A stretch of 64,000 bases of DNA from Haliotis rubra (lineage: Eukaryota), in contig NW_025766780.1 of assembly GCF_003918875.1 (NCBI RefSeq), positions 3,348,001 to 3,412,000 on the forward strand, written 5' to 3'. A model generated the notes under the pieces. That model was not told where the DNA came from. It was given only the letters and a program-made list of their open reading frames with translations, and searched no databases. Position 1 is the first letter of the stretch. Every line of letters begins with the position of its first letter. The position numbers and the translations under genes were made by a program. Of this stretch, positions 3,901 to 62,768 are shown piece after piece.

Positions 3901-6900
3901 GTGAATACAGTATAAAGATGTTGCAGTATGTGAATACACTATAAAGGTGTTGCAGCATGTGAATACACTATAAAGGGGTTGCAGTACGTGAATACACTAT
4001 AAAGGTGTTGCAGTTTGTGAATACACTATAAAGGCACTGCAATATAGAAATACACTATAAAGGCACTGCAATATAGAAATACACTGTAAAGACATTGCAA
4101 TGTGTGAATACAGGATGTTCAATAGTTATATTGTAGAAATGTTCCAGATAATGCTTAGTATTGGTACTACATTGTATTGTGATAATAATTTGTGGACCCA
4201 TGAATGTCCGGGTTAGAATTGGTCTTCAGTAACCCATACTTGTCGAAGATGTGAACAATGGGATCGGGTGGTTAGGTTCACTGACTTGATTGACATGTCA
4301 TTGTATCCCAATTGCGAAGACCGAAAGACATGCTGTTGATCACTGGATTATCTGGTCCATACTTGATTATTTTCACTCTGCCACCATCTAACTGGAATAT
4401 TGCTGAGTGTGGCATCAAACTAACCTCATTCACTTACTTTTTCAATCAATCAGTCAATCAATCAATCAACACTGATACAACAACAGTGTCAGAGCTACCT
4501 TTGAGCCTTGCTTCCTCTGCATCAAGATTACCATATGTGTTTTGGAAGTGATCAAATCTGAAATATTCAATAACAATTATCATTTATCAAAACAGATAGG
4601 TTTCATAATCATATCCAGCATGATCAAAACATGTTAAATAATATTCTGATAAGTTGAAACAATAAATTCACACACAGAGCAGCAGTTATTCATGATACCA
4701 TATTGGGCAACTAAAGCAGTGATCATTTGGTGAAGGTGGTGCCAGGTTCTAAGAATGTACATATTTCATGTAATATTTTGCCATAGGACACTCAAACTTT
4801 ACATTTACAATGCATTCTATTCATCCCTGTTAGTTAAGATATGCCAATAAAATAAATGAAATCATTTATTATTCAAGCACAATCACACAATCATAAACAT
4901 ACCTAAACAAATTTAAGAGCCTTGTTTAAATTTATACATTGTAATACATTTACAATGGTACATTTGCAGACACTGTGTAGAGCTGCTGAAAGCACCATTA
5001 ATCTTATTATTAATGTTTGTGTTTTAATGCACTCAGGCACTCCATGCCTGCAGTAGTCTGTACCAGACAAACTAGTCATCAGTATTGTGAGCCACATCCA
5101 ACTGGTGCTGGCAGACTGACTGACTGACTGACTGAGTTTGGTTTTACGCCGCTTTTAGCAATAATCCAGCAACATCACGGCGGGGGACACCAGAAATGGG
5201 CTTCACACATTGTACCCATGTGGGGAATCGAACCCGGGTCTTCGGCGTGACGAGCCAACGCTTTAACCACTAGGCTACCCCACCGCTCCGGTGCTGGCAG
5301 AAGATGGCTCACAGACAACCAAGTCACCAAGTCGGACCAACTGAACTTCATCTTCTCCTTTGACAGCCAGCAATAGCTGGGACTGACACCAACATCTGTC
5401 ATGAATTAGCACAAAATACTTCAAGTGTTGATACCTGGCCTCAAATTTGCATGAAATTAATGCAATTAGCTCCACCTCTGAACTATGAAACCTAATCAGA
5501 AACTCATGGTTTTATCAAGACTTTTGTTGAAGCCATTGTGGCTGAGTTGGTTAGATAGCCGACTTTGTGTGCTGTTGATAAGGTGCCCTACTCTGAGGGT
5601 GTGGCTTCAGATCCTAGATGGGACCCCGAAGAGAACTAGAATCTGTAATGTATGGGTAAAGTGTAATCCCAAATATTGCCAGAAACGTCATAAAGCTGGG
5701 ATTTAGAGAGAATACCTAAAATCACAAACTTAAACTCCAACTACTTGGTATGTGAGCTACCCTTCATCAAATCAAAAGTAGGAAATTAAAAATACAGCAT
5801 AGGCCAGGCCAATTTTATTTCTTGTTTTACGGATTTTTGTCCTCAGAAAACCTAAAGGAAGGAGAGAAGAAAAATAAGTCAAAGTAGTATTCCTTCTAAA
5901 TACTCAAAGTATGTTACTTTTGGCAATTTATGAAGTAAATATGGTTAAAAAAACAATCCAAAAACAAAATTGCTTACATTTTTGGCCAATAAATACATTA
6001 GGATTTTATTTTTTGAATGGGGAAAATTAATTATTATTTTTTTTCTTATTCTTGAAAAAAATATGACAGGCGGATCCGTAAAACAAGAAATATAATTGGT
6101 CTGGCCATATCTCAAAATGAAATCTGATCACCATCCGGATTTTACATGTTCTAAGCGATGCTACATATGAGTTAGCGTAATCCTCTGAATGTCAATGGCT
6201 GTGTTGTTTGTTCCCTAGGCCAGCTGTTGCTGTATTGGACATTTTCACCATATGAGTGAGAAGCATATTTCTTGTAGAGACTAGAGCAGTTCACAAGGTT
6301 ATCAAAACAGAAGACCCTCTGTAATACACAGTGGGCGACTGTCATAACTGCTTGATGAACCTGTGTAAAACAAACTGATAACTGACATGGCAACCTAACT
6401 CACCTAAAGTGTATATAGTCAACTTGGGTATACATGCCATGTTTTCACCAGTGTTTAATGCGAGAAACACAAACATATTTGGCATTATTTCATGCTACAA
6501 ACAGTGCAAGATAGAACAAACTTTATGGATAACAACTTCTTTATATTCGTGAGTGCGACGTTTCGATACAGATACTTGTACCGTTGTCAAGCATAATGGA
6601 ACATAAAGAAGGGGGAAGTATATATATACTGGATGTAACAATGTAACAAAGAAAACAACATAATTAACATAATTGGCTAGGCAGAAAGCTGATGAAACCA
6701 GAGAGTAGACAAAGGACAGGCGTGGAAGCCAATGATGTACAAATAATAATGAGATGTTTATACAGCAGAGTTTATACAGTAGATTGGGCTTGGTGGATGA
6801 GTGCATCATAACCGGATGGAATGAAGTATCCTTGGTCTCGGTTGATGGTGGGCTTTTGGCATTTGATGTGGATGGCTTTGGTGAGCTTGCGTTTAGTGAA

Positions 6901-9900
6901 GTCTGTTTGTTTGTTAGAGAGAATGGTGATGTCAGACCACTCTATTTGATGATTGGGGCTTGCTTTGATGTGGTCGGAAATGGCAGATATGCTGTCGGAA
7001 TTGGTAACAGAGGTCTGATGGTCTTTCACTCGGGTGTTGATGGGTCGGGACGTTTCACCCTATGTAGCTCTGCCCACAATCACAGTTTATTTTGTAGATG
7101 ACACATTTTGGGTTGTTGTTCACTTTCACTTCTAAAATGCCACTCAAAGAAGTTAACAGTGCAAGAGATGTTCATCCGTTTTTCTATAACCTGGAATCAT
7201 CAATGACTTTCAGCAATCCATTAGTATAATTTCCACAGCTATTTCACCTTTCCTGCTTTAGTGGAATATGTTTTGGCAGATAATCAAGTTGGATTGTTCT
7301 TTGGCATCCATTGTACATATAAAGTACATCCTGTCTTTCTCAACACAATCCAAACTACTCAAAGCACCAAAATCTGCTTTGCTCATTTGCCTCCCTTTAC
7401 CCTGTCCAGATACCTGGTGAATAACCAACGCTCCAAATGACCTTTTGTCCCAGTTTGCTTCCAGGGCAATTGTATATCTATATACATGTAGGTATCACAA
7501 GGTTGTGATTATCTATGACTTGCATTACTTCAGTCTTTTATCCCACAACAAGCCATGACATGGCTTGTACAAATTGATGTTAAACCCAACTAGCTCACTC
7601 ACTCCATCACTCACCCAGGTAGTCGATTTGATCCCTCACACATGGCCAGGACACCCATCTCTACACTGATATCTCCGACTGGCGTCCACATGGTGAGCAG
7701 AGACTTGGAGCCACGACTCATGTACACATTGTCCACATGGACCCCGGTGAAGGCATCGGTATGCACGGCACTGCAGAGACGGAATGTACATCAACAACGT
7801 GTTCATCCCAAACATCTCCATTTTGTTGGGAAAATACTATGCAGTTGAATGAATAGCACAATGCCTCGAAACAGATTTCCAACAAAATTGATCTCTTGAG
7901 TAGGAGAAATTTGTCTAAGCTACTAGTCAGGGTTGGCAACAGGAACATCGATTTTCAGCGGAAAACTTAATATTGTGTCATCGAATGGGGGTTTCTCAAT
8001 GGATTTAGACGAACAGTTTGAAATAAAATCCGCGGAAAATTGCCATCCCTGCTAGTTAGAGATTGGAGCGCTAGTGGTGGTGTTACTTCAGAAATGAAGC
8101 TTTGGCTGTGAATGGGTCCAGGGTATATATTACAACAAAATGGATACACAAGATATTCCAAGATGAAGCATTAGGTCAAATCATCCCCAAAGTACACTTA
8201 TTTGTACACTGCGTACAACACTGCTAGACACGGTGTATGAAATAAGCCAAAATCCAGCCAGACATCAGGGCTGGTAACTTCAAAATGTTGCCAGTCCAAA
8301 ATGGAATTAACCAGACCAATTTACGCAGATGTATTGAACATCTAAATTCTTTACCACACCATCAGGCTGGCTAGCTGTAGATTTAGACCGTCCGTCAGAA
8401 ATCTAGACCGTCTCGGTCGGTCGGGAGTAAAGTAATACCATTCACTATCATATAATACTGAGCTATAATTGCTTCATTTCTATTTGTGATAATGTTCTAC
8501 TGACAACTGCTTTGGACTCGTAGCCATATTTTGGCCACTGAACAAGTTTAGATAAATCCTTCTACAAGTATATTGTTATGAATGTAAGATATACAGCTAG
8601 GAGTTACTGTTGTGCCTCTTCCAGCTGCTGTAAGAAGCAATGGCAAGTAATAATTCCTGGGTCAATAAGTGCCTACCGTAACCACTTGTAGTCCAGTGTT
8701 GCAACATCTTTCCCAAAGAACTTCTTGAAGAAACTGAAAGCTGTTAATAAATAGGATTGACATTGAGGTAATCAGTAGAATTAAAGTCCAACATGTCAGA
8801 GTTATGGGAGAGTGAGATGTTATCAATACTTTGTACCTACTGCTACTTGTACAACTACTCATCCACTTCTAAAGAGTAAACACCCTCATACAATTTATCC
8901 TTGAAGCGCTCTTGTTTTTTAACTAATAAGTCAATCAGTGTAAACTCCAGTTTTCATTCTCAGCTCCCTAGGAAGTATCCAACCCTCCTTTTGTGCTGGA
9001 ATGATACAAGTTATGTGTATACGGCTCGACTTTGGTGATTCTGGGGTGCCAAGTTTGAAGCACCAGCCCCTCACCAATATCGTCATGAAACCTAATTGTG
9101 CAAATAGGTGTGTCCTGGACCTGAAAATCTCCTGCTACACCTTGATAAACCTAATGTATAATCACTAGATGCAGAGGCCTAAAGGGAAATGTGTTAACAA
9201 GGGGCGGGTAAATACATTTAGAGGGCTTGTCGTAAAATTGGTTTCTGCAATGTATTTTGCATCAAATTTGGAATTGCCATTTGTTTATATATAAATGTAC
9301 CTTTTAAAATATAATTGTGATGTATATCATGACATTTTGATGCATATTTGCAAACCCCAGGACATTTGGAAAAATGGTTACAGAGAGAAGAGGTCTGGAA
9401 AAATCTCTATGGCACCTTGACATATATATATATACTAGTTAAGTAATCTTGAGAGTGATGTTAAATCCCAATTTATTTCACTTTATTCTTGTGTGATACT
9501 TACGTCTCGAACCTTCAATGACGGCTTTGACAGGATCTTGATGGGTTATACCGGGTACTCCCTTGAGGTAAGAAAATCATGTATGACAAACAGTTCATAA
9601 AGTCGGTAAATCAGAACAATTAATGGACATCTAAAATCAGTATCCAGTAGTCTTGTTTTACTGTGCAGGGGCCATACTTGACTGCAAAACTGATAGCCAT
9701 TCAAACAACATGGTGGGTAAAAGTGACATAAGAATAGGTCCCCTGCACCCTATTGCTACATTCAAGGGGAAACTATAAAAATTTCTGAGTCACATGCCTG
9801 GATTCAAACCATGGACCTTAGGATCTGAAGTCAGACACCTTGTCCACTTGACCAAAGAGGTTAGCCCATCAGCAAGCTGCATTGCAAGGATGTCATCTAT

Positions 9901-19258: not shown

Positions 19259-22200
19259 GACAGACACACAGACAGACAGAGTTTATTTGCAGTAAAAGGC
19301 CATAGGCCCAAAATACATTCAAAGGAAATTTCAGTGTAGTCAGGGGCACAATGTGCTTTCATGTGTTTATAATAATCCTTTAACATAAAATAGATACAAG
19401 GCAACAGATTTTACAGTGTCTACATTAGTATTCTTGAAAAGATTTGCTAAAGAATATACAGTATAAGGCTTTTTAACACATTTTGTAATAAACCTCTCTC
19501 TTAGGTGTGAATAGGACTCACAGATGAACAGTACATGGAATTCATCTTCAATATAGGTAAGACCTTTAGATTTGCATGATGTACAAAATCTTTGATTATA
19601 ATCAGTGTTGTTATAACGCCCAGTTTCTACAGCTATTTTAAAATTACTACACCTAAATTGTGCTAAAACAGCTCTTAAATGTGTAGAAAGGTTAAACGAT
19701 AAATAACATTCAACATTTAACGCTGATTTAAAATACTGATAATAGTTGCATTTGGAAGAATTACTCAGGGAAGAGTACCAGGACTGTTTTAAATTATCTG
19801 ATAATCTTTGTTTAAATAAGCTTATAAACATCTTTACATCACCAACATCTTGGCTCAACCAAACATATCCAAAACCAAAATTAAACAGAAGATTTTTAAC
19901 TTTTGATGCCCATGTAGTTCTACCACTATCATCTAAAGACTTGAGCATAAGGTAGCTTTGAAAAGGTAATCTGTCATGAGGAAGTTGTAACAATCTACAC
20001 CAATATTTGATTACTCGGGTCATATAATTAAGCTGCAGGGGCAATCTGCCACATTCACCCAGGGCCATGGAATTACAAGATGACCTATTTATTTTCAGAT
20101 ACTTTTTACAAAAATCAAGCTGTACCGATTCAATACTTTTACAATAGGAAGTTCCCCATATTTCTGATCCGTAGCATAATATTGGTGTGATCAGTGCATC
20201 AAAAATTTTGAATAGATCTGTACAGTTAATGTTTCCGAATTTCCTTTGAAAGTGATTAATTGATAAAATTGCCTTTCTAGCTTGAGAAGCTAAACATAAT
20301 TGTGCCCTGGACCAAACAAGTTTTGGTGTAAATATGATGCCAAGATATTTATAAAAAGATACTGTTTCTTTTTGTTCCCCATTAAAATACCACTTTTCAT
20401 AAGATCTAAGAGGCCCACCATTTCTGAAAGCAACCACTTTTGTTTTCTTAACGTTTACTTTCATTCCTGTTTCCTCACAAAATAATTCAAGGGCATTTAT
20501 CTTTTTCTGCAGTTGAATACAAGTGTCCGAAAGAGCCGAAACATCATCAGCAAACATAAGGGCATACACATTATTGAAAACAGCATTGACAAATATTCCC
20601 TTACCACCTTCATTTGGCATAATTGTGCATAAATGATTAATAAATATTATAACTATCTAAGGGCTTAAAATGCATCCCTGGCGGGTACCCACATTACAAG
20701 AAAATTGCTTAGAAAGTCCCTCAGGGGTTCTAACACAGGTACAAAGTGAATTATACATACATGTGATAATATCTAAGAACTTCCCATCTAATCCAACCTT
20801 ACGAAGAGAATCTATAAGTATATCATGTTTAAGAGTATCGAAAGCTTTTGAAAAATCGATAAAAAGACAATAAAATCTGCCCTGTTTTTTACATGAATCT
20901 TCTGTATGAAAGCCTGAAGTGTAAAAATGTGGTCTGTTGTAGAATAGTTTTCCCTAAAGCCAGCCTGATATTCACAAATGATATTATTTAAATCACACCC
21001 GATTTTTAATCTTTTATTTAGAATTGATGTAAATAATTTACAAAGGGAATCAATGAGGGATATACCACGATAATTATCGGGGTCGTTCTTGTCGCCAGAT
21101 TTCAACAAAGGGCAAATAATGCTCTTACCCCAACTGGGAGGGAAATAGCCAGAGTCATAAATTCTGTTGAAAAGAACAGTGAGAGTAAGAACAATGAAAC
21201 ATCTCGACTCCTTTAGAAATTCATTTGCAATTCCGTCTGGACCAGGGGCTTTACTGACTGGCAAAGAGAGAATAGTTGTAGATATTTCTTGTTCGGAAAA
21301 TGGTTGGTTCAAAAAAGAATCATTGTTGCTTGTAGATTGTAAAGGTGAAGGTAAATGTTCTGGTGTTTTTTGCGAAGTATTAATGCATAACAGATTTGAG
21401 AAATGATCTGTCCACTGTTGGCATGTGATATTGGGTGAAAGTTGTGGTGAAGATCTGTAATTTTTAAGTGTTTTCCAAAATAATTTAGGGTTGGTGCTTG
21501 CTGCTACTAGTTTATCTTTCTGTTTATTTTGGAAATTTAATCTTTTTTGCTTGAATGCACATTTGAAGAGTGTTCGTAACTGTCTGAAGATATTAAAGTC
21601 TGCATTGTGATCTCTATGGGCTCTGAGTGCTGCATATTTGTCATGCTTTAAGTTTTCTAAGTCCTGATCCCACCTAGGTGGTTGAGTTCTTGTTTGTGAA
21701 GGAAATAAACCATTACATATGGTTTTTGTGTGATCAGCTGCTTTCTGGAAAAGAGTTACTAAATGTGAAAGTGCTTGGTCGATATTGTTATGGATGAGGG
21801 CATTTAAATGACTGTATTGATTATTAAACAATGACCGAAAGTTTGGAATGAATGCACTGTTTTCATCCTTGCACCACATATATTTTGTCCATTTATCATG
21901 TTTACCCTCTTGTACATTACTGTTTGAGGTAAGCGTATTAGAATAAGCAGTAGAGGGGAGTTTACTGTTAAGTGTGTTGATATTGAGTGTGCATGACAGT
22001 GGAAAGTGACATGAGTTATCTAGTGTGCCGACATTAAACTGCGTGATGAAAGGGAATAGTGACGAAGAAGCTAGCATGTAGTCAACTACACTGCAACCGT
22101 TATAAGTAAAGCATGTGAATTGACCACATAAATCATTTGCTAATCTACCATTTAAGGCATGAATGCCAAAAGTGCAACATAATTCAGCAAGTTTTTTCCC

Positions 22201-22329
22201 ATAATTATTATAAACCTGATCTCTAGAAGATCGAGGCATATCAAATGTATCTTTGGGATAATCATCATTTTCATATACACAGTCAATATATTATCATCTG
22301 GTATATAATCGAAGAAGTCTTTCATTCTA
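19259..22329 (-). mobile_element. 5'-truncated, frameshifted non-LTR retrotransposon (APE end + RT + C-terminal Cys/His domain; RTE-X-like, clade uncertain)
   Basis: ORFs 20812-22239 (SVVDY, KAPGPDGI, NYRGISL, QAGFR) and 19367-20620 (LMFADD, YKYLG, VETGRY..C..C..EDEFHVLFIC). AATAAA followed by a (TGTC)n tail. 11-bp TSD GCATTATAACA at 19248-19258 and 22330-22340. Confidence 0.9.
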
Positions 22330-22601
22330 GCATTATAACATCGCCATGGAAACGTCCTAGGTCACAAGGATAAAAACAGATCGGGTTTCACTATTTTCAG
22401 GTCGTAGCTATAGAACGTATTTCACATGTAATTTACATTCCTGAAAAATCAACACCGTTTATGACCAATTAAAGGCATTAAGGGCCAGTTATGTCCACAA
22501 CAATACTCATTATCTATAAGTAGGGCTGATTGGCGCGTGGCGTCCCTCCAATGACGCACTATCACAGCTTGTGATGTTCTGGTAATGGGTTTAAACTGTC
22601 T

Positions 22602-22735
22602 GACTTGTTTGAGTGGCATTTTAGAAGTTGAGACGTACAATATAGAACAAGTTTTATGGATAACAACTTCTTTATTTCGTGAGTGCGACGTTTCGATACA
22701 GATTCTTGTACCGTTGTCAAACAAGAGTGATACAT
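22602..22735 (-). mobile_element. Penelope-like pLTR fragment with hammerhead-like motif and 3' tail
   Basis: Minus: TGT-TTGACAA-CGGTACAAGAATCTGTATC-GAAACGTC-GCACTCACGAAATAAAGAAGTTGTTATCC...CTCAACTTCTAAAATGCCACTCAAACAAGT. Near-identical to the 6512-6600 pLTR. Confidence 0.8.
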
Positions 22736-23839: not shown

Positions 23840-24056
23840 GCTGTTTGATTTTTGGTTAACGATGTACACAGCAATAATTGAACCATATCACAACGGTGTG
23901 TAAAGAATCGAGTCTGAACAATACAATCCAGAAATTGACAATTGATGAGAATCGATCTGTGAACCCTGATACGACGGCATGTGTCCACCAATCAGCGTGC
24001 TGAACTACCCGATCCCTTTAGTCGTCTCTAATGACAAGCATGCTTGCTGAAGACCA
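23840..24056 (-). mobile_element. Degenerate Nin-like SINE abutting the 53-bp array
   Basis: CCCGATCCCTTTAGTCGTCTCTAATGACAAGCATG..CTGAAGACCAAT. Confidence 0.6.
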
Positions 24057-24059
24057 ATG

Positions 24060-25410
24060 CTTCATAACAGTGTTAGTACCTACGCCGAAACGTCTCACTC
24101 ATTCATCACTTGCTTGATAACGGTGTTAGTACCTTCGCCGAAACGTCTCACTCATTCATCACTTGCTTGATAACAGTGTTAGAACCCTCGCCGAAACGTC
24201 TCACTCATTCATCACTTGCTTGATAACAGTGTTAGAACCCTCGCCGAAACGTCTCACTCATTCATCACTTGCTTGATAACGGTGTTAGTACCTTCGCCGA
24301 AACGTCTCACTCATTCATCACTTGCTTGATAACAGTGTTAGTACCTTCGCCGAAACGTCTCACTCATTCATCACTTGCTTGATAACAGTGTTAGTACCCT
24401 CGCCGAAACGTCTCACTCATTCATCACTTGCTTGATAACAGTGTTAGAACCCTCGCCGAAACGTCTCACTCATTCATCACTTGCTTGATAACGCTGTTAG
24501 TACCTTCGCCGAAACGTCTCACTCATTCATCACTTGCTTGATAACAGTGTTAGAATCCTCGCCTAAACGCCTCACTCATTCATCACTTGCTTGATAACGG
24601 TGTTAGTACCTTCGCCGAAACGTCTCACTCATTCATCACTTGCTTGATAACGGTGTTAGTACCCTCGCCGAAACGTCTCACTCATTCATCACTTGCTTGA
24701 TAACGGTGTTAGTACCTTCGCCGAAACGTCTCACTCATTCATCACTTGCTTGATAACAGTGTTAGTACCCTCGCCGAAACGTCTCACTCATTCATCACTT
24801 GCTTGATAACGGTGTTAGTACCTTCGCCGAAACGTCTCACTCATTCATCACTTGCTTGATAACGGTGTTAGTACCTACGCCGAAACGTCTCACTCATTCA
24901 TCACTTGCTTGATAACGGTGTTAGTACCTACGCCGAAACGTCTCACTCATTCATCACTTGCTTGATAACGGTGTTAGTACCTTCGCCGAAACGTCTCACT
25001 CATTCATCACTTGCTTGATAACAGTGTTAGTACCTTCGCCGAAACGTCTCACTCATTCATCACTTGCTTGATAACGGTGTTAGTACCTTCGCCGAAACGT
25101 CTCACTCATTCATCACTTGCTTGATAACGGTGTTAGCACTTACGCCGAAACGTCTCACTCATTCATCCCTTGCCGATAACGGTCTTAGCACTTACGCCGA
25201 AACGTCTCACTCATTCATCCCTTGCCGATAACGGTGTTAGTACCTTCGCCGAAACGTCTCACTCATTCATCCCTTGCTTGATAATGGTGTTAGTACCTAC
25301 GCCGAAACGTCTCACTCATTCATCCCTTGCTTGATAACAGAGTTAGTACCTACGCCGAAACGTCGCACTCATTACAATAAAGAAGTTGACTATCCATAGA
25401 ACTTTGTTTT
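24060..25410 (+). repeat. Tandem array of ~25 x 53-bp hammerhead-like units ending in a Penelope pLTR 3' segment
   Basis: Unit CATCACTTGC-TTGATAA-C-GGTG(TTAGTACCTT)CGCC-GAAAC-GTC-TCACTCATT. The last unit reads GTC-GCACTC and continues AATAAAGAAGTTGACTATCCATAG, like the pLTRs at 6.5, 22.7 and 62.2 kb. Confidence 0.9.
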
Positions 25411-25872
25411 CCTTCAATGCTGATGGGGGTTGGATGTAGTCTCCAGCTTTCGTCTCTTGTAAGAAGTGATTTACCGGATCGGACGGTCAGACACGATGTA
25501 CTTGTATCATCTACCAATCTGAATATCTATTTTGAGACAACTCCTCTCTAGATTTTATTTCCAATATATATGCTACACATTACTATTATTATTTTATTTA
25601 AAAAGGAAGTTATTATTATTTTATTATTATGTTTTATAGATTAAAGATAATATTTTTTTTATTATTATTATTATTATAATAGGATATTTATATAGCGCAC
25701 ATATCCACGCACTAGTGCATGCTCAAGGCGCTGGTATTGAACTCTTTTATGAAAGTTCTCTACAACACGTGAACATAGAACTATTTATGACAGCATACGC
25801 CAGTACAGTACATTTATGCTGAGTTCGGTTTTCATACATGTATGTTATAGTAGCTTCTTAGACATTAATATA

Positions 25873-27466
25873 TACTACTCAAAAGAAGTTAAGGGTCAAA
25901 CAAAATGTGCACATCAAAATTAGAATAGGCAATTTTGAGACTATTAGGACAGGAAACTTTCTGTATGGGTGTTATTTGGACTGAATACATCATAAGTGTA
26001 TGAGAAATGTTATCATTACCCGTTCCCTTAGGTAACTGTCAAATTTAACAGTAAATTCGGACTTCTTGATTTAAACCATGAACTCGGCCACACTAAATTG
26101 ACCCTCGTCCTCGAAACAACCATTATGCCACCTAATGCACATTTTACACGTGCTGTCCATGGATGTCATTTTATGAATGCAAATTTTCACAATAAAAAGA
26201 CCAAGCATTTTCAAATGGGCCTCATTAGAAATTTGAAGATGGTCAGACGATAGCTCAGCATCCAAGACAGAGGAAGGGCAATAGGTTGGCTTCAAGATGG
26301 TCAAACCCAACGAAGTGTTGCTAGGCGACTAAATGTAAGCCAGAGTGTTATTGGGAGACTATGGCAGAGGTTCAGGACAACAAATGCTGTCCAGAATCGG
26401 CCCCGTTCCGGAAGACCCCGATCAACAACAGCCCGTGATGATCGCTACTTGATGATGATGGCTTTGCGACAGCGATTTGTGAACCCAAGACATCTTCAGG
26501 ATCAGCTGAGAGCTGGCCGTGGCACCAACGTATCCGATCAGACAGTTCGAAATCCGAGGTTTGCGTTCTCGACGTCCTGCAGTGCGACCACCACTACTTG
26601 AGCGGCACAGAAGAGCTCCCCGAGATTGGTGCCGACGGCTTGTTCGTTGGAACCATGGTCAGTGGGCACAGACAATCTTTTCTGATGAATCCCGCTTCAC
26701 ACTCCAGATTTATGATGGTCGTGCCCGTGTTTATCGTCGTCAACGAGAGAGGTATGCTGACGTAAACATTGCCCAACGTTTACCTTTCGGAGGCGGAAGT
26801 GTGATGGTCTGGGCGGGTGTCTCAGTGCACCACAGAACTGCTCTCTACATCGTCCATGGGAATTTGACTGGTCTTCGAAACCTCAACGAGATTATCCAAC
26901 TTCTGGTAATGCCACTTCTTCGTCAACCTGGACCATTGGCCTGGTTCAAGGATGATAACGCTAGACCCCATCGTCCCAGGGTGGTAACAGACTTTCTGCA
27001 GCAGCAGAACGTTCAGCACATGGTGTGGCCTGCATATTCACCCGACTTGTCACCAATTGAGCATGCCTGGGATGAGTTAGGACGAAGAATTCGAGCTTAT
27101 CACGTCCCTGCCATCAATCTCCAGGAACTGGGTCAATGACTAGTCGCAGAATGGGCAGCAAGCCCTCAACAGTATTTCAGACGCTTAATGAACAACATGC
27201 GTCAACGTTGTCAGGAATGCATCCACGCTAACGGTGGCTACACGAGTTACTAAAGATTTCTGACTTTGTGTGAACTCTGATTTTGGGGTACTTGACTTCG
27301 ATGAATTTTGGAATAAAGTTGTGTCTTATCAATTCACTTTTTGTTTTTGTTTTCGTTTCTTAAGAGCTTGAGGTTTTGTTTATGTCATTGGTTGTCACAA
27401 TTTTATTTCCATATCTTATACTTTTAATCCAAAATACTTGTGACCCTTAACTTCTTTTGAGGAGTA
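25873..27466 (+). mobile_element. Tc1 DNA transposon with disrupted transposase
   Basis: TIRs TACTACTCAAAAGAAGTTAAGGGTCA / TGACCCTTAACTTCTTTTGAGGAGTA. Transposase ~26239-27253 (GRPR, FSDESRF, DDNARPH, SPDLSPIEHAW) with stops and a frameshift. Confidence 0.92.
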
Positions 27467-33704: not shown

Positions 33705-35184
33705 TACTAGCCACATAAAGAAACTGTATCCCAGGTGATAAGTACGGTAACAATGTCAAAGGTACATATAAACTTTAATGGAGGGATCATAAGATCATAA
33801 CAAGTCGGGAGAATTTCAATTGGAAAGTCAATCACAATGACGTCACGAGTCCACAGGCGACCATGTCACAAGCTCAATAACGGGTATGTCCACCATCGGC
33901 ATTGAGAACAGCAGTGCATCGACGACGCATAGAGCTTATCAAACGTGCAAGGAAGGCTTGTAGGATGTCACGCCAGATTCTCTCAAGTTCTGTTGCAAGG
34001 TCAAGGACGTTATCTGGCGGATGAGGAAGACGGCGTAGACGTCGATCCATCTCGTCCCAAACATGCTCTATCGGGGAGAGATCCGGTGAATTTGCAGGCC
34101 AAGGCAGTGAGTCAACGTTGTGGTGTTGCAAGAAATCCATAGCAACCCTTGCCGTATGAGGGCGGGCATTGTCCTGTTGGAATGTTAACCCAGGGCCATG
34201 ACGTTGCAGAAAAGGAATTGCCACAGGTCGAAGAATCTGATCCTTGTAGCCCACACAAGTTAAGTTGCCCTGAACAATCACCAAAGGAGTTCTTTGGCGT
34301 GCTGTTAATCCATCCCAAATCATCACGGAACCACCACCAAAGCGATTCCTCTCCAAGACACAGGCCTGTGCATAACGTTCTCCCACGCGTCTATAGGCAC
34401 GTTGACGTCCATCACTATGTGAAATGTTAAACCTGGACTCATCTGTAAAAACAACATTTCTCCACCAAAACAAGGGTCTGCGGACATGATTTCGGCACCA
34501 CATTCGGCGAGCTTGTCGATGACGTTGTGTCAGGATAGGCCGTATGGCTGGACGTCGTGGTCTGATTCCGTGATGACGTAAACGTTGTCGAACTGTGTTT
34601 GGGTGGATACGACGAAGTCCTGGGATGGTTCGGGCAGTCATCACTGCAGTCTGAAACCTGTGGCGAAGATGGGTCGCCCTTATCCATCTGTCCTGTCTTG
34701 GCGTTGTTACACGTGGACGTCCAGAACGTGTCCGATCGATGACGTCATTTGTGTTCTGGTAGCGTCTCACCAGTGCAGAAATGGTGTTCCGGTGGCAGTG
34801 GAAATGTGCAGCCACTTGTCGTTTAGACATTCCCCCACGGACCATCCCAATGGCCTCATGACGTTGTGCAGACGTGAGCCTTGGCATGCTATGCGTTTCA
34901 ATAGCCGTTTAATTTTTTGAACGATCGCAAGGGCAGGGGTTAAGCTTTCCAAAGTGACAGTATTGTGTGGCATTCATTTGCTCTGTTTCTCTTTCTAGGA
35001 ACGCAAGTGCAACAACGTATTGCACGTCTCAAGGACGAACCCACTGACGTCACGGAACGTGGCACGTGCATGCATGTTGGATACATGTCACTAATCTCTG
35101 AGTTTAAATCCTTATGTGTCTATACAGGTTTGATAAATTTAGATTTTAAATTTTTGTATGCACAGTTTCTTTATGTGCCTAGTA
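33705..35184 (-). mobile_element. Full-length Tc1 transposon
   Basis: TIRs TACTAGCCACATAAAGAAACTGT / ACAGTTTCTTTATGTGCCTAGTA with a TA target on both sides. Confidence 0.93.
33874..34887 (-). CDS. Tc1 DD34E transposase, uninterrupted 337 aa
   Basis: HTH region, SGRPR, FTDESRF, FQQDNARPH, then 34 residues to the E of SPDLSPIEHVW. Confidence 0.92.
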   Translation of the reverse strand: MPRLTSAQRHEAIGMVRGGMSKRQVAAHFHCHRNTISALVRRYQNTNDVIDRTRSGRPRVTTPRQDRWIRATHLRHRFQTAVMTARTIPGLRRIHPNTVRQRLRHHGIRPRRPAIRPILTQRHRQARRMWCRNHVRRPLFWWRNVVFTDESRFNISHSDGRQRAYRRVGERYAQACVLERNRFGGGSVMIWDGLTARQRTPLVIVQGNLTCVGYKDQILRPVAIPFLQRHGPGLTFQQDNARPHTARVAMDFLQHHNVDSLPWPANSPDLSPIEHVWDEMDRRLRRLPHPPDNVLDLATELERIWRDILQAFLARLISSMRRRCTAVLNADGGHTRY

Positions 35185-35881: not shown

Positions 35882-38800
35882 ATGGACGTCAGCATGTTGA
35901 CTCTTAATGGAGTTTTGCTTGTGTTTTTGATCCTGACAGGTGAGTATATTTTTTGTGTGCGATGTGGCTATGCTGACGTTCGTGTTACCATTACGGCTTT
36001 GTTTCCATTCCCTTTAGCGTGGAACATACGGTATAGTGACTGTTTATGGTGAACAATATAACACAACAATCCTGATTAATGAACATACAAACCTTTCAGT
36101 TTTAAAAATTGACACTTGTGCTTGTGCAGCAGAAATGTATAGCATCATCAGTTCTATGAGAAAACGATTGCAATGTGATGCGTGTATTTTCAGTTGTTAA
36201 TGGAGACATTACATTCTCATCTTACTATGGCGACCACATGGTTCTACAGAGAGGTCCCAAGCATGCTATCATTACTGGACGGGCAACTACGATCGGCGAT
36301 ACTGTTACAGTAACAGTTGGTAACGGTGTTGCCAAGGGAAGCGGTAAAGTAACAACGGCATCAGATGGGAAAGGATTCTGGAAGGTCAAGTTGTCAGCAG
36401 TTTACCAAATAGGCCCCTTTGATGTGACTGTGAGATCTAGTGAAGGAAGCAAGAGTCTCCATGATGTGTTGTTTGGCGATGTCTGGGTGTGTTCTGGACA
36501 GAGCAACATGGAGTTTACAATGTATCAGGTAATTAATGTGTAATTAATGATATGCTGTAACTCTACATGCGATATATGCATGGACACAGTTGTAGTTCCA
36601 CACAAAGTATGCCCATGGAAAGGGTTATGGAATGCCTGTTGGAGTGCCCGGTGTGTTGCGCAACACTGTATCATGTGTTGACAACGTCTCCCATTGTTTT
36701 CTGACGCCCAGGGGAATGCCGTTTGACTGAACACATATTGCCTTATTGTCTCGATGGAATGTAAATCATGTCCATTACCACCTGGAGGAACCCGCGTGCT
36801 TGGTAATCCAAATCCTCCCGCCTGTTATTGAAGTATTTTTCTTTGTAGGTTCTGAATAATACATATGAAGTACAAAGTGGCTTGAAGTTCACTGACATAC
36901 GTCTATTCAAGGCTGAGCATGTGTCATCATCGACACCTCTTATGGATCTACAGAAGGTCAAGATACCGTGGACAACTCCAAACTCAAGTATATTTCAGTT
37001 CAGATCTCTTCAAAATAATGACATCAATAATGGATCACCACACCTTTGCTCCAAGTCACTGACATAAAATGTCCTGTCTGATTCTGTCCCATTTGGGATG
37101 TCTTTGTTCCTTGTCGCTACACGTGTGTTTATTTATTGTTTTCAATTTCCATGTTCATGTATCTGTTAGAGTTTGGTGAGGTCGTCTCCATACTAAATGT
37201 TAAATGTTACTTTTAAAAGAACCTTGATCCCATTCGCAACCATACATGTTTCGAATATATGAACAACATTCTTTAGTACCATCTTTGTGTTCACTACAAA
37301 TGGTGACGACATCGTAAACGCGATGTATGCTTGTTTTAAACATCTCCTGAGACTGTAACATCACATCTCAGCCTCCAAAGGATTCAACACAAGCAGGCAG
37401 GAAGATTGTGTTACCATGTAGTATTTCTGAGCACATGGAAATGAACCCACTGACATCTGGGTCACACTGTACCTGTGTAATATCTTTGTTGTTTAACGCC
37501 ACACTCAGCAATAATTCAGCTATAACGGAGGTGATTTCATAACCGATTCTGGAACTGACAAATGTGTGATAGATATTCAGGGTAACCTGCCACACTGTCA
37601 AGTACAATGCCATGCAATGAACCCGATTAGAGAGTCTGAGCTCACTTTGAATGAGTATGATACAATGAGCATTGATACATGGGCAGAATTTCAAACCCCC
37701 TATGCGGAGCAGTATCATGTATATTTGACTGATCAAATTTCTTTTGCAGAGGATCTGTACGGATTTTCAGCATTATGTTTCATGTTTGGAGAACGCATGT
37801 ACCCTCACCTGAACTATCCTATCGGGCTAGTGGAATCTGACTGGTGGGGCACAAGCATCGACTGGTGGTCGTCTCCGGAAGCGGTTGCGAAGTGTAACAA
37901 CCAGGGAAAACGAGCGTATGGTTTGCTTTTGCTCAGTTTCACTTTGAATTTATATACTGGCTGCAACGTTAAAACCAGATTCCCATTTACCATGCATCCT
38001 TAATCACTAACTGATTATTGCAGGGGTTTTAATCAGATTATCACTTCCCACGCATCATTAGATGATAACTGAACAGTGCAACTGTTCTAACCAGATGATC
38101 ATTTTACATGCCTCCTTACATAATAACTGAATATTACAATGGTTTTCACAAGATGATCACTTTACATGCCTCCTTACATATTAACTTAATATTACAATGG
38201 TTTTCACCAGATGATCACTTTACATGCCTCCTTACATATTAACTGAATATTACAATGGTTTTCACCAGATGATCACTTTACATGCCTTCTTACATATCAA
38301 CTGAATATTACAATTGTTTTCACCAGATGATCACTTTACATGCTAGCTTACATATTAACTAAATATTACAATGGTTTTCACCAGATGATCACTTTACATG
38401 ATTTCTTAAATATACTCTAAAATTACAATGTTTTTTAACCAGATTATCACTTTACATGCATCCTTAGATATTAACTGAATATTACAATGGTTCTCACCGG
38501 ATGATCACTTTACATGCCTCCTTACATATTAACTGAATATTACAATGGTTTTCACAAGATGATCACTTTACATGCCTCCTTACATATTAACTAAATATTA
38601 CAATGGTTTTCACAAGATGATCACTTTACATGCTAGCTTACATGTTAACTGAATATTACAATGGTTTTCACCAGATGATCACTTTACATGCCTCCTTACA
38701 TGTTAACTTAATATTACAATGGTTTTCACCAGATGATCACTTTACATGCATCCTTACATATTAACTTAATATTACAATGGTTTTCACCAGATGATCACTT

Positions 38801-41800
38801 TACATGCCTCCTTACATATTAACTGAATATTACAATGGTTTTCACAAGATGATCACTTTACATGCCTCCTTACATATTAACTAAATATTACAATGGTTTT
38901 CACCAGATGATGACTTTACATGCTAGCTTACATGTTAACTGAATATTACAATGGTTTTCACAAGATGATCACTTTACATGCTAGCTTACATGTTAACTGA
39001 ATATTACAATGGTTTTCACCAGATGATCAGTTTACATGACTTCTTAAATATAAACTAAAATTACAATGTTTTTTAATCAGATTATTACTTTACATGCATC
39101 CTTACATATTAACAGAATAGTACAATGGTTTTCACCGGATGATCACTTTACATTCATCCTTCGATATTAACTGAATATTACAATGGTTCTCACCGGATGA
39201 TCACTTTACATGCATCCTTACATATTAACTGAATATTACAATGGTTTTCACCGGATGATAACTTTACATGCATCCTTAGATATTAACAGAATAGTACAAT
39301 GGTTTTCACCGGATGATCACTTTATATGCATCCTTACATATTAACTAAATATTACAATGGTTTTCACAAGATGATCACTTTACATGCCTCCTTACATATT
39401 AACTGAATATTACAATGGTTTTCACAAGATGATCACTTTACATGCCTCCTTACATATTAACTAAATATTACAATGGTTTTCACAAGATGATCACTTTACA
39501 TGCCTCCTTACATATTAACTGAATATTACAATGGTTTTCACAAGATGATCACTTTACATGCTAGCTTACATATTAACTGAATATTACAATGGTTTTCACC
39601 AGATGATCACTTTACATGCATCCTTACATTAACTGAATATTACAATGGTTTTCACCGGATGATCACTTTACATGCATCCTTAGATATTAACTGAATATTA
39701 CAATGGTTTTCACCGGATGATCACTTTACATGCATCCTTACATATTAACTAAATATTACAATGGTTTTCACAAGATGATCACTTTACATGCCTCCTTACA
39801 TATTAACTGAATATTACAATGGCTTTCACAAGATGATCACTTTACATGCCTCCTTACATATTAACTAAATATTACAATGGTTTTCACAAGATGATCACTT
39901 TACATGCCTCCTTACATATTAACTAAATATTACAATGGCTTTCACCAGATGATCACTTTACATGCCTCCTTACATATTAACTGAATATTACAATGGTTTT
40001 CACAAGATGATCACTTTACATGCCTCCTTACATATTAACTAAATATTACAATGGTTTTCACAAGATGATCACTTTACATGCTAGCTTACATGTTAACTGA
40101 ATATTACAATGGTTTTCACCAGATGATCACTTTACATGCCTCCTTACATATTAACTAAATATTACAATGGTTTTCACAATCCTTCGATATTAACTGAATA
40201 TTACAATGGTTCTAACCAGATGATCACTTTACATGCATCCTTACAAATTAACTGAATATTACAATTGTTTTCACCGGATGAACACTTTACATTCATCCTT
40301 AGATATTGACTGAATGTTGCAATCGTTTCAACCAGGCGATCACTTTACATGGATCCTTAGATGTTAACTGAATTGTTTTAATATTGCAGATCTCCACAGA
40401 ACTTTGAATTGTGGAATGCTATGATCAGCCCACTGCTCCCACTGTCCATTTATGGCGTTCTTTGGTATCAAGGTTAGTAATGTTTGGTTTATCGGATCTC
40501 ACGTTCAGACTAAAGAGTAAAATATCGCGATTACATTAAAGTTAGTGTATAAATTGTCATTATGGTTCCAGGTGAAAATGACGTCGGTCATGCAAGTAGA
40601 TATGCATGCAGTTTCCCAACAATGATCGAAGACTGGAGAAAACACTGGCACCAAGAATCACTGGGTGAAACGGACGTTGATTTTCCATTTGGATTTGTGC
40701 AGGTACTGTTATAGGTACAGAATTAGGCTCTCCAATTAACCCTTTATAGACATCAAGTAATGAAGGTGATATTATGTACAGAGCTAAAGTATTTTGAGAT
40801 AATATTTTGTAGACTCTCAACATGTACATGTACAGTAATTTATAATCCAAAACTGTGTTCCACAGGAGATATTGTTTGTGTGAGATCAAACGATACTTCC
40901 TAGGAGATATCGTTTTGACAGCAGATTTTGTACAATGCCCTGACACTGCAATGACGTCATGAACTTGATGACGTACAATTCTATGATATCCCTGCACTGC
41001 AACTCAAATGGCAGTACCGTGTTCAGAGATGTACATTGTTTCATTGAAAACTAACGAAGAGTCATTTTGGATCATAAATAGAATCTCATCCTCGTGTCTT
41101 CTGATATCAAATATATCAACACTCGGATATTTGTAACTTTATTTACTCGTGTTGATATAATTGTTATCAGATGACACTTGGGTGAGATTCTCTATGGTAT
41201 GTACATGTCTACAGCTCGCCGCATACAGAAATGACAGCAGCATTCGCGGAGGCTGGCCTGACACCCGCCTGGCTCAGACAGCCAACTATGGCTATGTGCC
41301 TAACCCGAAGATGAAGAACGTATTTATGGCCGTGTCCTTGGACTTACCTGACTTTTCATCACCTTCGGGAGCGTAAGTTGGAATTTGCAAAGTCCCTTGT
41401 TAAGGTCACAAATAGATAACTGCCAACTATGTAACTCTCTGACGAGTAAAGTGCTAGATTGGTTTCTCTGTCGTAAATAACACCGTGATAGATATGGATA
41501 TAAAATTTTATAATATATGTTAAAGGAGGAATGTTCCCCACGACCTGGTATCCATAGACAGGGATGACCCTTACTTTGTCTCAGAGTCATATGTTTGATT
41601 AGTATAGGTCATGAAATTTGAGTTTGAAGAAATACAATTGGGTTTTTAATGACTTTAACAAAATTCACCAGGACTTACAACTGGAAGGATCGTTATCACC
41701 CTTTAAGCATTATCTAAGCATCTTCGCCTCGAGGAGCATTGCCGAACAATTTCTACCACTGATGGCCTATCGCAAAATGTTTTTGCCACCTTATGATTCC

Positions 41801-60968: not shown

Positions 60969-62768
60969 TACCCCTCGTCAATAGTATCGCAGCACACATT
61001 TTAAAGTCAGATTAGAAAATATAATTGTCGGTTTTTGAAACTACAAGTACATGTTATTATGCTACACCATCTGTGAATATAATAACACGAACACACACTG
61101 TTCCGAGCTGCACGTGCATGCTTGCGTTGAGCATGCTTGTTCCGGGGGTGGGTTTGCTAAAAATGCAGTATGCACATAGCCTCTCTTACGCTGGCAGACA
61201 CAGCTAAAATTCGATTTTGTCATAGATTAAGCTTTATTTTGACCAACCAGTGAAATGCCGAAGCGTCCAGTACCTCTGAACCAAAGATGGCAAATTATTG
61301 ATATGCACCAGAGTGGTATGTCATGTCGTGCTATTGAAGCACAACCGAACATTATTCACAGTGTCATCAGCAGGCCAATACGTCGGCATACTACTTCCGG
61401 TGAAGTGAAGGATGCACAGACGTCTGGACGTCCCAGAAAAACCAATGACAGGGAAGATCGTGCTCTCGAACGCCAAACCAGACGAAGCCTAAAGTCTACT
61501 TGTACATAGCTGCGACATGGATGGCATCCATACAACAGAGTATCCATCAGCACCATCAGGCGACGCCTAAATTCTGCAGGATTGAGAACAAGACGACCAA
61601 TCAGACGTCCACTCCTCACAAATGAGCACCGCCATGCTTGTTTAGCTTGGTGCCAAGCACGTGCTCGCTGGAACCTGAGGACATATGGAGACGGATCCAC
61701 TGGTCCGATGAAAACAGATTTTTGCTGCATCACACAGACGGGAGGGCACGAGAGGCACAGCATATGATCAGAGGAACATTCAAGCTGATGTTTCATTTGG
61801 AGTTGGATCTGTCATTGTGTCACAGTTCCCGGAACTCCAAATGGACAGAGGTACCGGAACTTGATCCTGGACGGTGCTGTTGTGCCTCATTTCGATAACC
61901 ATCCTCTCGCCACACGTCCAGTCTTCATGGACGATAATGCCAGACAACATCGTGCTCGAGCTGTTGTTCAGCTTCTCGAACACAACGCCATTGAGACACT
62001 ACCATGGTCAGCCAGAAGTCCAGACATGAATCCTATTGAGCATTTGTGGGACATTTTGGGACGTACTTCTTTGATGGTCATTTTAGAAGTTGAGTGGATG
62101 AAGAATAATGACAATTATTATGTATATACCATTTCTTTTATTCTGTGGAGGCTATCGTTTCGACATAGGTTCTAATGTCACCACTTGCTTGACAACGACA
62201 TTAGAACCTATGCCGAAACGTCGCCTCCACAGAATAAAAGAAGTTGTATATCCATAATAATTGTCATTATTCTTCATTTTGGGACGTAGTATGAGAGCAA
62301 GGGACCATACAGTTCAGGAATTGACCCATGCATTGCATGATGAGTGGCAGCAGATACCCCAACAGAGAATCAGACGTCTGGTGACCAGCGTGAGACGGCG
62401 TGTAGAAAATGTTATCCAAGTGCGAGGCGGTAACACCAGATACTGAGTTGGCCTGTCATTGTGGACCTTACTAGTGTGTTCGACCTTAATGAAATGTGAA
62501 CTGTGTTGTGTGTCTGCTGTAACGGCCTCGGCAGCCATACTAATTTCATCTTATTTTACGGCGACATTTGTGAACTTTAGTTTGCTACAATTAAACCCTC
62601 AATTAGTGCTCAAATTCGGTCTTGTGTTGTCAATTTTCTGACTGAACGCTCACATGAGGCCATCTAAACAGTTTAATGTGCTTTTCTAAGCGTCGTGTTT
62701 ATGAAGTTGAAGATTCCGTTTTACTTAGTGAAAAAAAGTGGGTTGTGCGATATTTATGACGAGGTACA
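60969..62768 (+). mobile_element. Tc1 transposon, disrupted and carrying a PLE insertion
   Basis: Imperfect TIRs CCTCGTCAATAGTATCGCA / TGCGATATTTATGACGAGG. Transposase 61255-62446 (SGRPRKT, WSDENRF, DDNARQH, SPDMNPIEHLWD, GGNTRY). Confidence 0.88.
62066..62274. mobile_element. 209-bp ORF-less Penelope-type insertion: inverted pLTR pair with hammerhead-like motif
   Basis: 14-bp TSD CATTTTGGGACGTA (62052-62065, 62275-62288) and ~85-bp inverted arms. Core TGC-TTGACAA-C-GACAT(TAGAACCT)ATGCC-GAAACGTC-GC. The tail is on the left arm only. Confidence 0.85.

What the first reader, a model, noticed from the sequence alone, without database searches (positions are those of the whole stretch)
24060..25410. 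Satellite built from ~25 tandem 53-nt hammerhead-ribozyme-like units derived from a Penelope pLTR
Seen: every full unit reads TTGATAA-C-[stem II GGTG/CGCC, or the variant AGTG]-GAAAC-GTC, and the array ends in the same AATAAAGAAGTTG..ATCCATA segment as three PLE termini in this window. Established: PLE termini carry minimal type I hammerheads; C3-G8 can be replaced by a compensating U3-A8 pair (UUGANAA); hammerheads with unstable stem III can cleave as dimers; tandem hammerhead repeats (retrozymes) yield small circular RNAs, normally from much longer units. Here stem III is ACGU with no loop, so it cannot fold in a monomer but is self-complementary, and neighbouring units could supply the partner. 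Inference: this is either a minimal retrozyme-like unit (53-nt monomers, perhaps copied from a circular RNA by PLE RT) or a ribozyme-derived satellite. Caveat: only the last unit keeps the 3-bp stem I (UGC/GCA). Internal units have UCA and may cleave poorly or not at all.
Basis: partly seen in the sequence, partly recalled or inferred. Interest (0 to 1): 0.85.

Follow-up and report, generated by a model that had tools for sequence, protein, structure and literature searches.

The report
Minisatellite grown from broken Penelope ribozyme
The ribozyme-bearing end of a Penelope-like jumping gene was copied 25 times head to tail in this mollusc genome, but a mutation beside the cutting site of 24 copies probably disables them, so this is most likely an ordinary tandem repeat of a known kind and not a tiny self-copying RNA.

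Summary
The array is real: 25 units, period 53 bp, 24058-25373, ending in a Penelope-like (PLE) pLTR tail (to 25416), inside a candidate 7-bp target-site duplication. Each unit is a U3-A8 minimal hammerhead from an abundant pLTR family (thousands of contigs in each of four organisms). It looks dead as a retrozyme. All 24 internal sites carry a U1.1·C2.1 mismatch, a letter rare in the family. Only 12 of 25 cores keep stem II. The one unit with intact stem I has a broken stem II. Variants do not avoid critical positions (p=0.77), none is compensatory, and neighbours share them (p=0.003), as in DNA-level slippage or unequal exchange. The 53-nt circle has no stable fold. No RNA run held it, which does not show silence. 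Best reading (about 0.75): a PLE partial-tandem insertion seeded a minisatellite. Tandem hammerhead repeats of 51-972 bp derived from pLTRs are already catalogued (Li et al. 2026 preprint). This scan noted similar short arrays elsewhere in this genome (unchecked). Cleavage and transcription are untested.

The parts
24058..25373 (+). Tandem array of 25 minimal-hammerhead-derived units (53 bp; two of 52 bp), 45% GC
24058..24094 (+). Unit 1: begins exactly at the stem I 5' strand, lacks the upstream 7-nt family segment of internal units; G5C and A10.1 lesions
24095..25311 (+). Units 2-24: all followed by T at position 1.1 (mismatch with C2.1); 12 keep an intact core and a stem II of at least 4 bp
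25328..25367 (+). Unit 25: the only intact 3-bp stem I (predicted cut after 25364), but stem II broken by A10.1 and A10.3
25321..25416 (+). Solo-type pLTR segment (ribozyme plus tail) of an abundant PLE family; other copies match to 25416 and then continue with more family tail
   Evidence: tables 7 and 8
24055..24061 (+). Left copy of candidate 7-bp target-site duplication (CAATGCT); overlaps the element's first 4 bases
   Evidence: chance about 0.004 for 15-nt boundary windows
25415..25421 (+). Right copy of the candidate target-site duplication
23847..24057 (-). Left flank: old dispersed SINE-like repeat (about 72% identical to several copies in the window), lacking about 22 nt next to the array; not part of the element
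   Evidence: strand inferred from its simple-repeat tail
6500..7166 (-). Comparator: 5'-truncated PLE with a frameshifted GIY-YIG remnant (6775-7123), intact U3-A8 minimal hammerhead (6554-6593), inverted tail and 12-bp TSD
22600..22723 (-). Comparator: solo pLTR with intact U3-A8 minimal hammerhead and full tail
62052..62288 (+). Comparator: inverted pLTR insertion with decayed hammerhead and 14-bp TSD; shares the loop and the upstream segment with the array unit

Best explanation
A locus-specific minisatellite seeded by a PLE insertion. Step 1 (inferred): a PLE reverse transcriptase inserted a 5'-truncated partial tandem, i.e. two short pLTR pieces each holding the hammerhead plus the tail, with a short TSD. 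Step 2 (shown as a pattern; order inferred): the founder carried a private A11.3G change, found in all 25 units, and the upstream copy acquired G1.1T. Step 3 (inferred from shown patterns): slippage or unequal exchange multiplied the junction-bearing unit. That spreads T1.1 to all internal units without selection, because about 44 of the 53 possible exchange points lie upstream of it. Units then decayed and swapped variants with neighbours. Function (predicted, untested): internal sites cleave negligibly. At most the terminal site could be cut weakly by an upstream intact core if the locus is transcribed on the + strand. The array is a tolerated by-product.
For: Family letters: A at 25354 in 96-99% of laid depth in four organisms while all array units have G; no row for T at 25365, so T1.1 is under 5% in the family (table 3). 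Candidate TSD, and clear TSDs at other PLE insertions in the window. Unit 1 lacks the 7-nt family segment that internal units have, so the founder was at least a dimer. Partial tandems with 5' truncation are the normal PLE insertion form. Nine of 17 variants are shared; adjacent units differ by 2.35 vs 3.08 shuffled (p=0.003); Mantel rho 0.27 (p=0.0008); many four-gamete pairs. The family-type A11.5 survives at both ends while a derived T fills 18 units. Variable sites: 9 of 28 critical vs 7 of 25 other (p=0.77), none compensatory, unlike the cricket hammerhead satellite pDo500. A mismatch right after the cut slows hammerheads at least 500-fold (review PMC3138052). T1.1 costs the double-hammerhead fold about 5.5 kcal/mol in silico. 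Four unrelated arrays cover 8% of this window; a rough extrapolation gives about 70 arrays per 1000 Mb containing a whole core by chance.
Against: No cleavage or expression data. Twelve cores are still intact and inter-unit stem III can form. A PLE hammerhead has been shown to be protein-assisted, so tolerance in vivo is unknown. The 500-fold figure comes from trans-acting minimal hammerheads and I read it only in a review. The TSD is short, overlaps the element's ends, and competes with a deletion model because the left repeat lacks about 22 nt. I could not scan the whole genome for sister arrays. The chance estimate rests on one window.
Confidence: 0.75

Rival explanations
1. Minimal retrozyme. 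A dimeric transcript was cut at both sites, the 53-nt monomer (starting with U1.1) was circularised, and a PLE reverse transcriptase copied it by rolling circle after priming on the pLTR tail.
For: The cut-to-cut monomer of a founder dimer would equal the array consensus. Non-LTR retrozymes are proposed to derive from pLTRs and to move with PLE enzymes. Minimal hammerheads show low activity as dimers and trimers.
Against: It needs cleavage at a U1.1·C2.1 site. [quoted passage not shown] Variation is neighbour-shared rather than star-like, and shows no constraint. No RNA holder was found (weak evidence). Eight of nine predicted Xenopus dimers tested did not cleave.
Confidence: 0.08
2. One-step reiterative copying. 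The telomerase-related PLE reverse transcriptase jumped back repeatedly on a linear pLTR RNA and wrote all units at once.
For: Other family contigs show back-joints that restart at 25273-25277, just upstream of stem I, with implied periods of about 37, 40, 47, 70 and 87 bp (table 5c; my arithmetic). A stereotyped restart point fits template jumping and probably explains the first duplication.
Against: Repeated copying of a solo template would give G1.1 in every unit, as in the terminal one, but all 24 internal units have T. Later variants are shared by neighbours.
Confidence: 0.06
3. Residual or co-opted ribozyme device. The 12 intact cores act as enzyme halves that cut the single intact terminal site, or transcripts of other family members, trimming read-through RNA.
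For: In the dimeric fold a core pairs with another unit's site, so an intact core plus the unit-25 site gives one complete hammerhead; that outer stem I is predicted at 0.7-0.9 for units 24+25.
Against: The recognition arms are only 3 and 4 bp (-0.9 and -1.7 kcal/mol). The double-hammerhead fold lies about 14 kcal/mol above the ensemble. No selection is seen. The flanking repeats appear to read away from the array (inferred).
Confidence: 0.06
4. Assembly artefact: the array is much shorter, or some unit variants are consensus errors.
For: The best holder has only 43% of sampled words, and no laid contig joins the tail to the unique flank.
Against: 43% exceeds the roughly 25% of 31-mers that lack array-specific marks (hand count), so array-type words exist in that run. 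Short-read contigs break in repeats and drop rare variants. The variant pattern is structured.
Confidence: 0.05

Closest known systems
PLE minimal type I hammerheads, U3-A8 variant (Cervera and de la Peña 2014, PMC4209133)
   Same: [quoted passage not shown]
   Different: That paper reports mostly single motifs or pairs 0.1-3 kb apart. Here there are 25 head-to-tail copies, with stem I broken in 24.
pLTR-derived tandem hammerhead repeats, 'non-LTR retrozymes' in the wide computational sense (Li, Clavereau and Pollet 2026, bioRxiv 10.64898/2026.07.22.740005)
   Same: Tandem units holding a type I hammerhead, homologous to a pLTR. The 53-bp unit is within their 51-972 bp range. Their model is the same: a PLE end seeds a locally amplifying minisatellite.
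   Different: They require two consecutive complete motifs, which my descriptor does not find here. No mollusc was in their sample, and 75% of their families had at most 7 units.
Proven metazoan non-LTR retrozymes of coral, mussel and axolotl (Cervera and de la Peña 2020, PMC7229834)
   Same: Tandem DNA repeats with one type I hammerhead each, GC under 50%, coexisting with PLEs.
   Different: Those units are 170-400 nt, carry canonical hammerheads, cleave in vitro and accumulate as self-paired circles from many loci. None of this is met or shown here.
Hammerhead satellite pDo500 of Dolichopoda crickets (PMC2837043)
   Same: Satellite with a hammerhead in each unit and a possible double-hammerhead fold.
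   Different: In pDo500 the ribozyme is more conserved than the rest, position 1.1 is almost invariant and changes are compensatory. Here there is no such constraint.

Membership tests
PLE pLTR minimal hammerhead | Core boxes (C3-G8 or U3-A8; GAAA; UH) with palindromic 15.2-16.2 | tested here: met
   21 of 25 units keep the core boxes; units 1, 10, 22, 23 do not
PLE pLTR minimal hammerhead | Extra nucleotide after position 9, G10.1-C11.1 pair and a stable helix II | tested here: met
   Met in 12 of 25 units; broken in the other 13 or their cores are
PLE pLTR minimal hammerhead | Helix I closing the junction | tested here: not met
   The 1.1-2.1 pair is broken in 24 of 25 units; unit 25 has helix I but not helix II
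PLE pLTR minimal hammerhead | Homology to a PLE terminus (tail, TSD, link to a GIY-YIG element) | tested here: met
   The GIY-YIG call rests on the motif and on Atlas features of a 65%-identical homolog; Pfam was blank. The linked element is a related subfamily (77% identical), not the parent.
Non-LTR retrozyme (Li et al. 2026 definition) | Tandem repeat with at least two consecutive complete hammerheads | tested here: not met
   No unit has core, stem II and stem I together by my descriptor; their own descriptor was not available
Non-LTR retrozyme (Cervera and de la Peña 2020) | Unit of about 150-450 bp with a canonical type I hammerhead | tested here: not met
   53-bp unit with a minimal motif
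Non-LTR retrozyme (Cervera and de la Peña 2020) | Monomer circle highly self-paired | tested here: not met
   Circular MFE +0.6 kcal/mol, 30% of bases paired
Non-LTR retrozyme (Cervera and de la Peña 2020) | Self-cleavage in vitro | not testable with these tools
   Predicted to be poor
Non-LTR retrozyme (Cervera and de la Peña 2020) | Expression as linear and circular monomer RNA | tested here: inconclusive
   No holder is on record as RNA; only contigs were available, which cannot show ends or strand
Non-LTR retrozyme (Cervera and de la Peña 2020) | Same unit dispersed at many loci | tested here: inconclusive
   T1.1 is under 5% of the family and other organisms' word shares (0.20 or less) fit solo copies, but no genome-wide scan was possible
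Non-LTR retrozyme (Cervera and de la Peña 2020) | GC under 50% and TSD longer than 4 bp | tested here: met
   45% GC; candidate 7-bp TSD
TE-derived minisatellite | Head-to-tail 10-100 bp units with variants spread by local exchange | tested here: met
   Neighbour test p=0.003, Mantel p=0.0008, four-gamete pairs
TE-derived minisatellite | Copy-number variation between alleles | not testable with these tools
   Needs long reads from several individuals

The most novel reading that the evidence does not exclude
The 53-nt unit is a working miniature retrozyme: with help from PLE protein, multimers cleave despite the U1.1·C2.1 mismatch and release a 53-nt circle, about a third the size of the smallest proven animal retrozyme circles, which PLE reverse transcriptase can copy to new loci.
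Probability: 0.07. Interest if true: 0.7.

Novelty: new member of a known kind. Interest (0 to 1): 0.25.

Why it matters
As it most likely stands, the array is a clear worked example of the proposed route from a PLE end to a hammerhead-bearing tandem repeat, in a mollusc. It also warns that motif-based 'retrozyme' counts can include arrays whose cut sites are dead. The unit-by-unit lesions and flanks let the order of events be read. If cleavage and circles were shown, it would set a new lower size bound for animal retrozymes and show unexpected tolerance beside the cut site. A side result may be of more use: partial tandems of this family seem to restart just upstream of stem I, which may mark where PLE reverse transcription stops or where the RNA begins.

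Tried and rejected
Rfam at both thresholds: no hammerhead model matches; this is uninformative for a loop-less U3-A8 motif. Run search: no RNA holder. I did not send the whole array to read laying because the tool turns away long repeats; only the last two units plus flank (25259-25900) were laid, so copy number and the left junction are unverified. Word shares of 0.05-0.20 in organisms B-H were rejected as evidence of an orthologous array, since about a quarter of 31-mers lack array-specific marks. The apparent excess of A10.1 at 25339 was rejected as a mapping effect: G-bearing copies fit unit 24 better, where depth is about five times higher. A pattern scan for short-period U3-A8 tandems gave 106 metagenome and 5 viral hits, none a clean tandem hammerhead array; these collections hold little animal DNA. 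One hit labelled human gut metagenome (L077) was left out unread. The other three large arrays of the window hold no hammerhead core. Absolute folding probabilities were rejected as evidence because the family-type control is also disfavoured; only the difference is used. Lünse et al. and Werner and Uhlenbeck were not held and are cited only through reviews. The held supplement of Li et al. was uninformative. The two N runs were not touched.

Full report
Observation. The array is real. TRF reports 24058-25373, period 53, 24.9 copies, 95% matches, and I count 25 cores. The last unit runs into a tail shared with three other termini in the window. The terminus at 6557(-) ends a 5'-truncated element with a frameshifted endonuclease remnant, an inverted tail and a 12-bp TSD. 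Pfam does not recognise the remnant, but a 65%-identical homolog groups with GIY-YIG clusters by Atlas features. This is the known PLE insertion anatomy. Unchecked scan notes name the host as the abalone Haliotis rubra; I did not confirm this.

The motif. It matches the published PLE minimal hammerhead: loop-less palindromic stem III, an extra base after position 9, G10.1-C11.1, and the U3-A8 core variant. A strict descriptor hits 12 array units and two solo termini, against 0.03 hits per shuffled window. Ten units have A10.1, four have core lesions, and two are 52 bp. All 24 internal cut sites are followed by T, which cannot pair with C2.1. The last unit has the 3-bp stem I but two mismatches in stem II. 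No unit is complete on its own.

The family. Laying four runs on the last two units plus flank gave 2,477-4,422 contigs each (not all on the pLTR part); the longest listed pieces span about 25321-25416 and then run on into more family tail. The unit therefore comes from an abundant pLTR family present in at least four organisms; depth is not a copy number. The family has A at 25354 (96-99% of depth), giving a perfect 5-bp stem II, whereas all 25 array units have G. T at position 1.1 is not listed, so it is under 5%. Both letters are thus essentially private to this array. Other contigs show back-joints restarting at 25273-25277 with implied periods of about 37-87 bp (table 5c; my arithmetic), so short partial tandems with other periods appear to exist in the family. 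Unchecked notes describe 61-bp, 69-nt and nine-unit hammerhead-like arrays elsewhere in this genome.

How it arose. A 7-bp direct repeat flanks the element (24055-24061 and 25415-25421; chance about 0.004), overlapping its first four bases. Unit 1 starts at stem I and lacks the 7-nt family segment found upstream in internal units, so if the TSD is real the founder already held two copies: a PLE partial tandem (inference). A later deletion that also removed about 22 nt of the left flanking repeat is an alternative. The expansion looks like DNA-level turnover. Nine of 17 variants are shared, adjacent units are more alike than shuffled order (p=0.003), distance grows with separation (Mantel p=0.0008), and many variant pairs show all four gametes. 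The family-type A11.5 persists at both ends while a derived letter fills 18 units. From a dimer with T1.1 in its first copy, most exchange points hand T to every new unit, so no selection is needed (inference). Repeated copying of a solo RNA template would instead give G1.1 everywhere.

Function. Variants hit 9 of 28 critical and 7 of 25 other sites (p=0.77) and none is compensatory. In the cricket satellite pDo500, by contrast, the hammerhead is the conserved part and position 1.1 is nearly invariant. A mismatch at the base after the cut slows hammerheads at least 500-fold according to a review. In silico the double-hammerhead fold of units 16+17 lies 14.9 kcal/mol above the ensemble, against 9.4 with G1.1; only the difference is meaningful. 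One complete hammerhead can be drawn from an upstream intact core plus the unit-25 site, so weak terminal cleavage is not excluded, especially as a PLE hammerhead was found to be protein-assisted. No run holding the array is on record as RNA, which does not show silence.

Background. Four unrelated arrays cover 8% of this window and solo termini are common. A rough extrapolation from this one window gives about 70 arrays per 1000 Mb that contain a whole core by chance. A hammerhead array somewhere in such a genome needs no special mechanism.

Comparison. It works like a TE-derived minisatellite and descends from a PLE pLTR. It fails the tested retrozyme features (unit size, complete consecutive motifs, self-paired circle); activity and expression are untested. 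A 2026 preprint already catalogues pLTR-derived tandem hammerhead repeats from 51 to 972 bp, proposes local minisatellite amplification from a PLE end, and found 8 of 9 tested dimers inactive.

Verdict. New member of a known kind; interest 0.25. Probabilities: ribozyme-dead minisatellite 0.75, working mini-retrozyme 0.08, one-step reiterative copying 0.06, residual cutting device 0.06, assembly inflation 0.05.

Noticed in passing
window 25273-25277 (tables 5c and 8): Back-joints in other family copies, and many solo copies, start just upstream of stem I (25321-25330 in unit 25). This may be a stereotyped RNA 5' end or reverse-transcription stop upstream of the ribozyme rather than at its cut site.
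   Followed up: partly
window 51100-51290: A fourth, decayed PLE terminus with an inverted arrangement (half hammerhead on the - strand, tail on the + strand).
   Followed up: partly
window 6500-7166 (-): 5'-truncated PLE with a 1-nt frameshift in the GIY-YIG motif, 12-bp TSD, lying next to an exon-like ORF at about 7610-7790 (-) that resembles a PhyH-type dioxygenase (from memory, untested).
   Followed up: partly
window 2993-4112, 37986-40373, 56706-57205: Three more minisatellites (29, 58 and 62 bp). The 62-bp unit has a TGATGA box but no GAAA core in the consensus, so it is not a hammerhead.
   Followed up: partly
window 25677-25742: Another very abundant short repeat just right of the array, deeply covered in three of the four runs and far less in the fourth.
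   Followed up: no
window 25873-27466, 33874-34887, 61250-62450: Tc1/mariner elements; the one at 33874-34887 (-) has an uninterrupted 337-aa transposase ORF.
   Followed up: no
window 19367-22239 (-): Broken non-LTR retrotransposon ORF with weak RVT_1 hits.
   Followed up: partly
L044:1282-2152 and L004:346-708: Metagenome contigs with clusters of 7 and 3 divergent motifs ending in the same GAAACGTC box with a hairpin before it; possibly decayed minimal hammerheads from a eukaryotic repeat.
   Followed up: no
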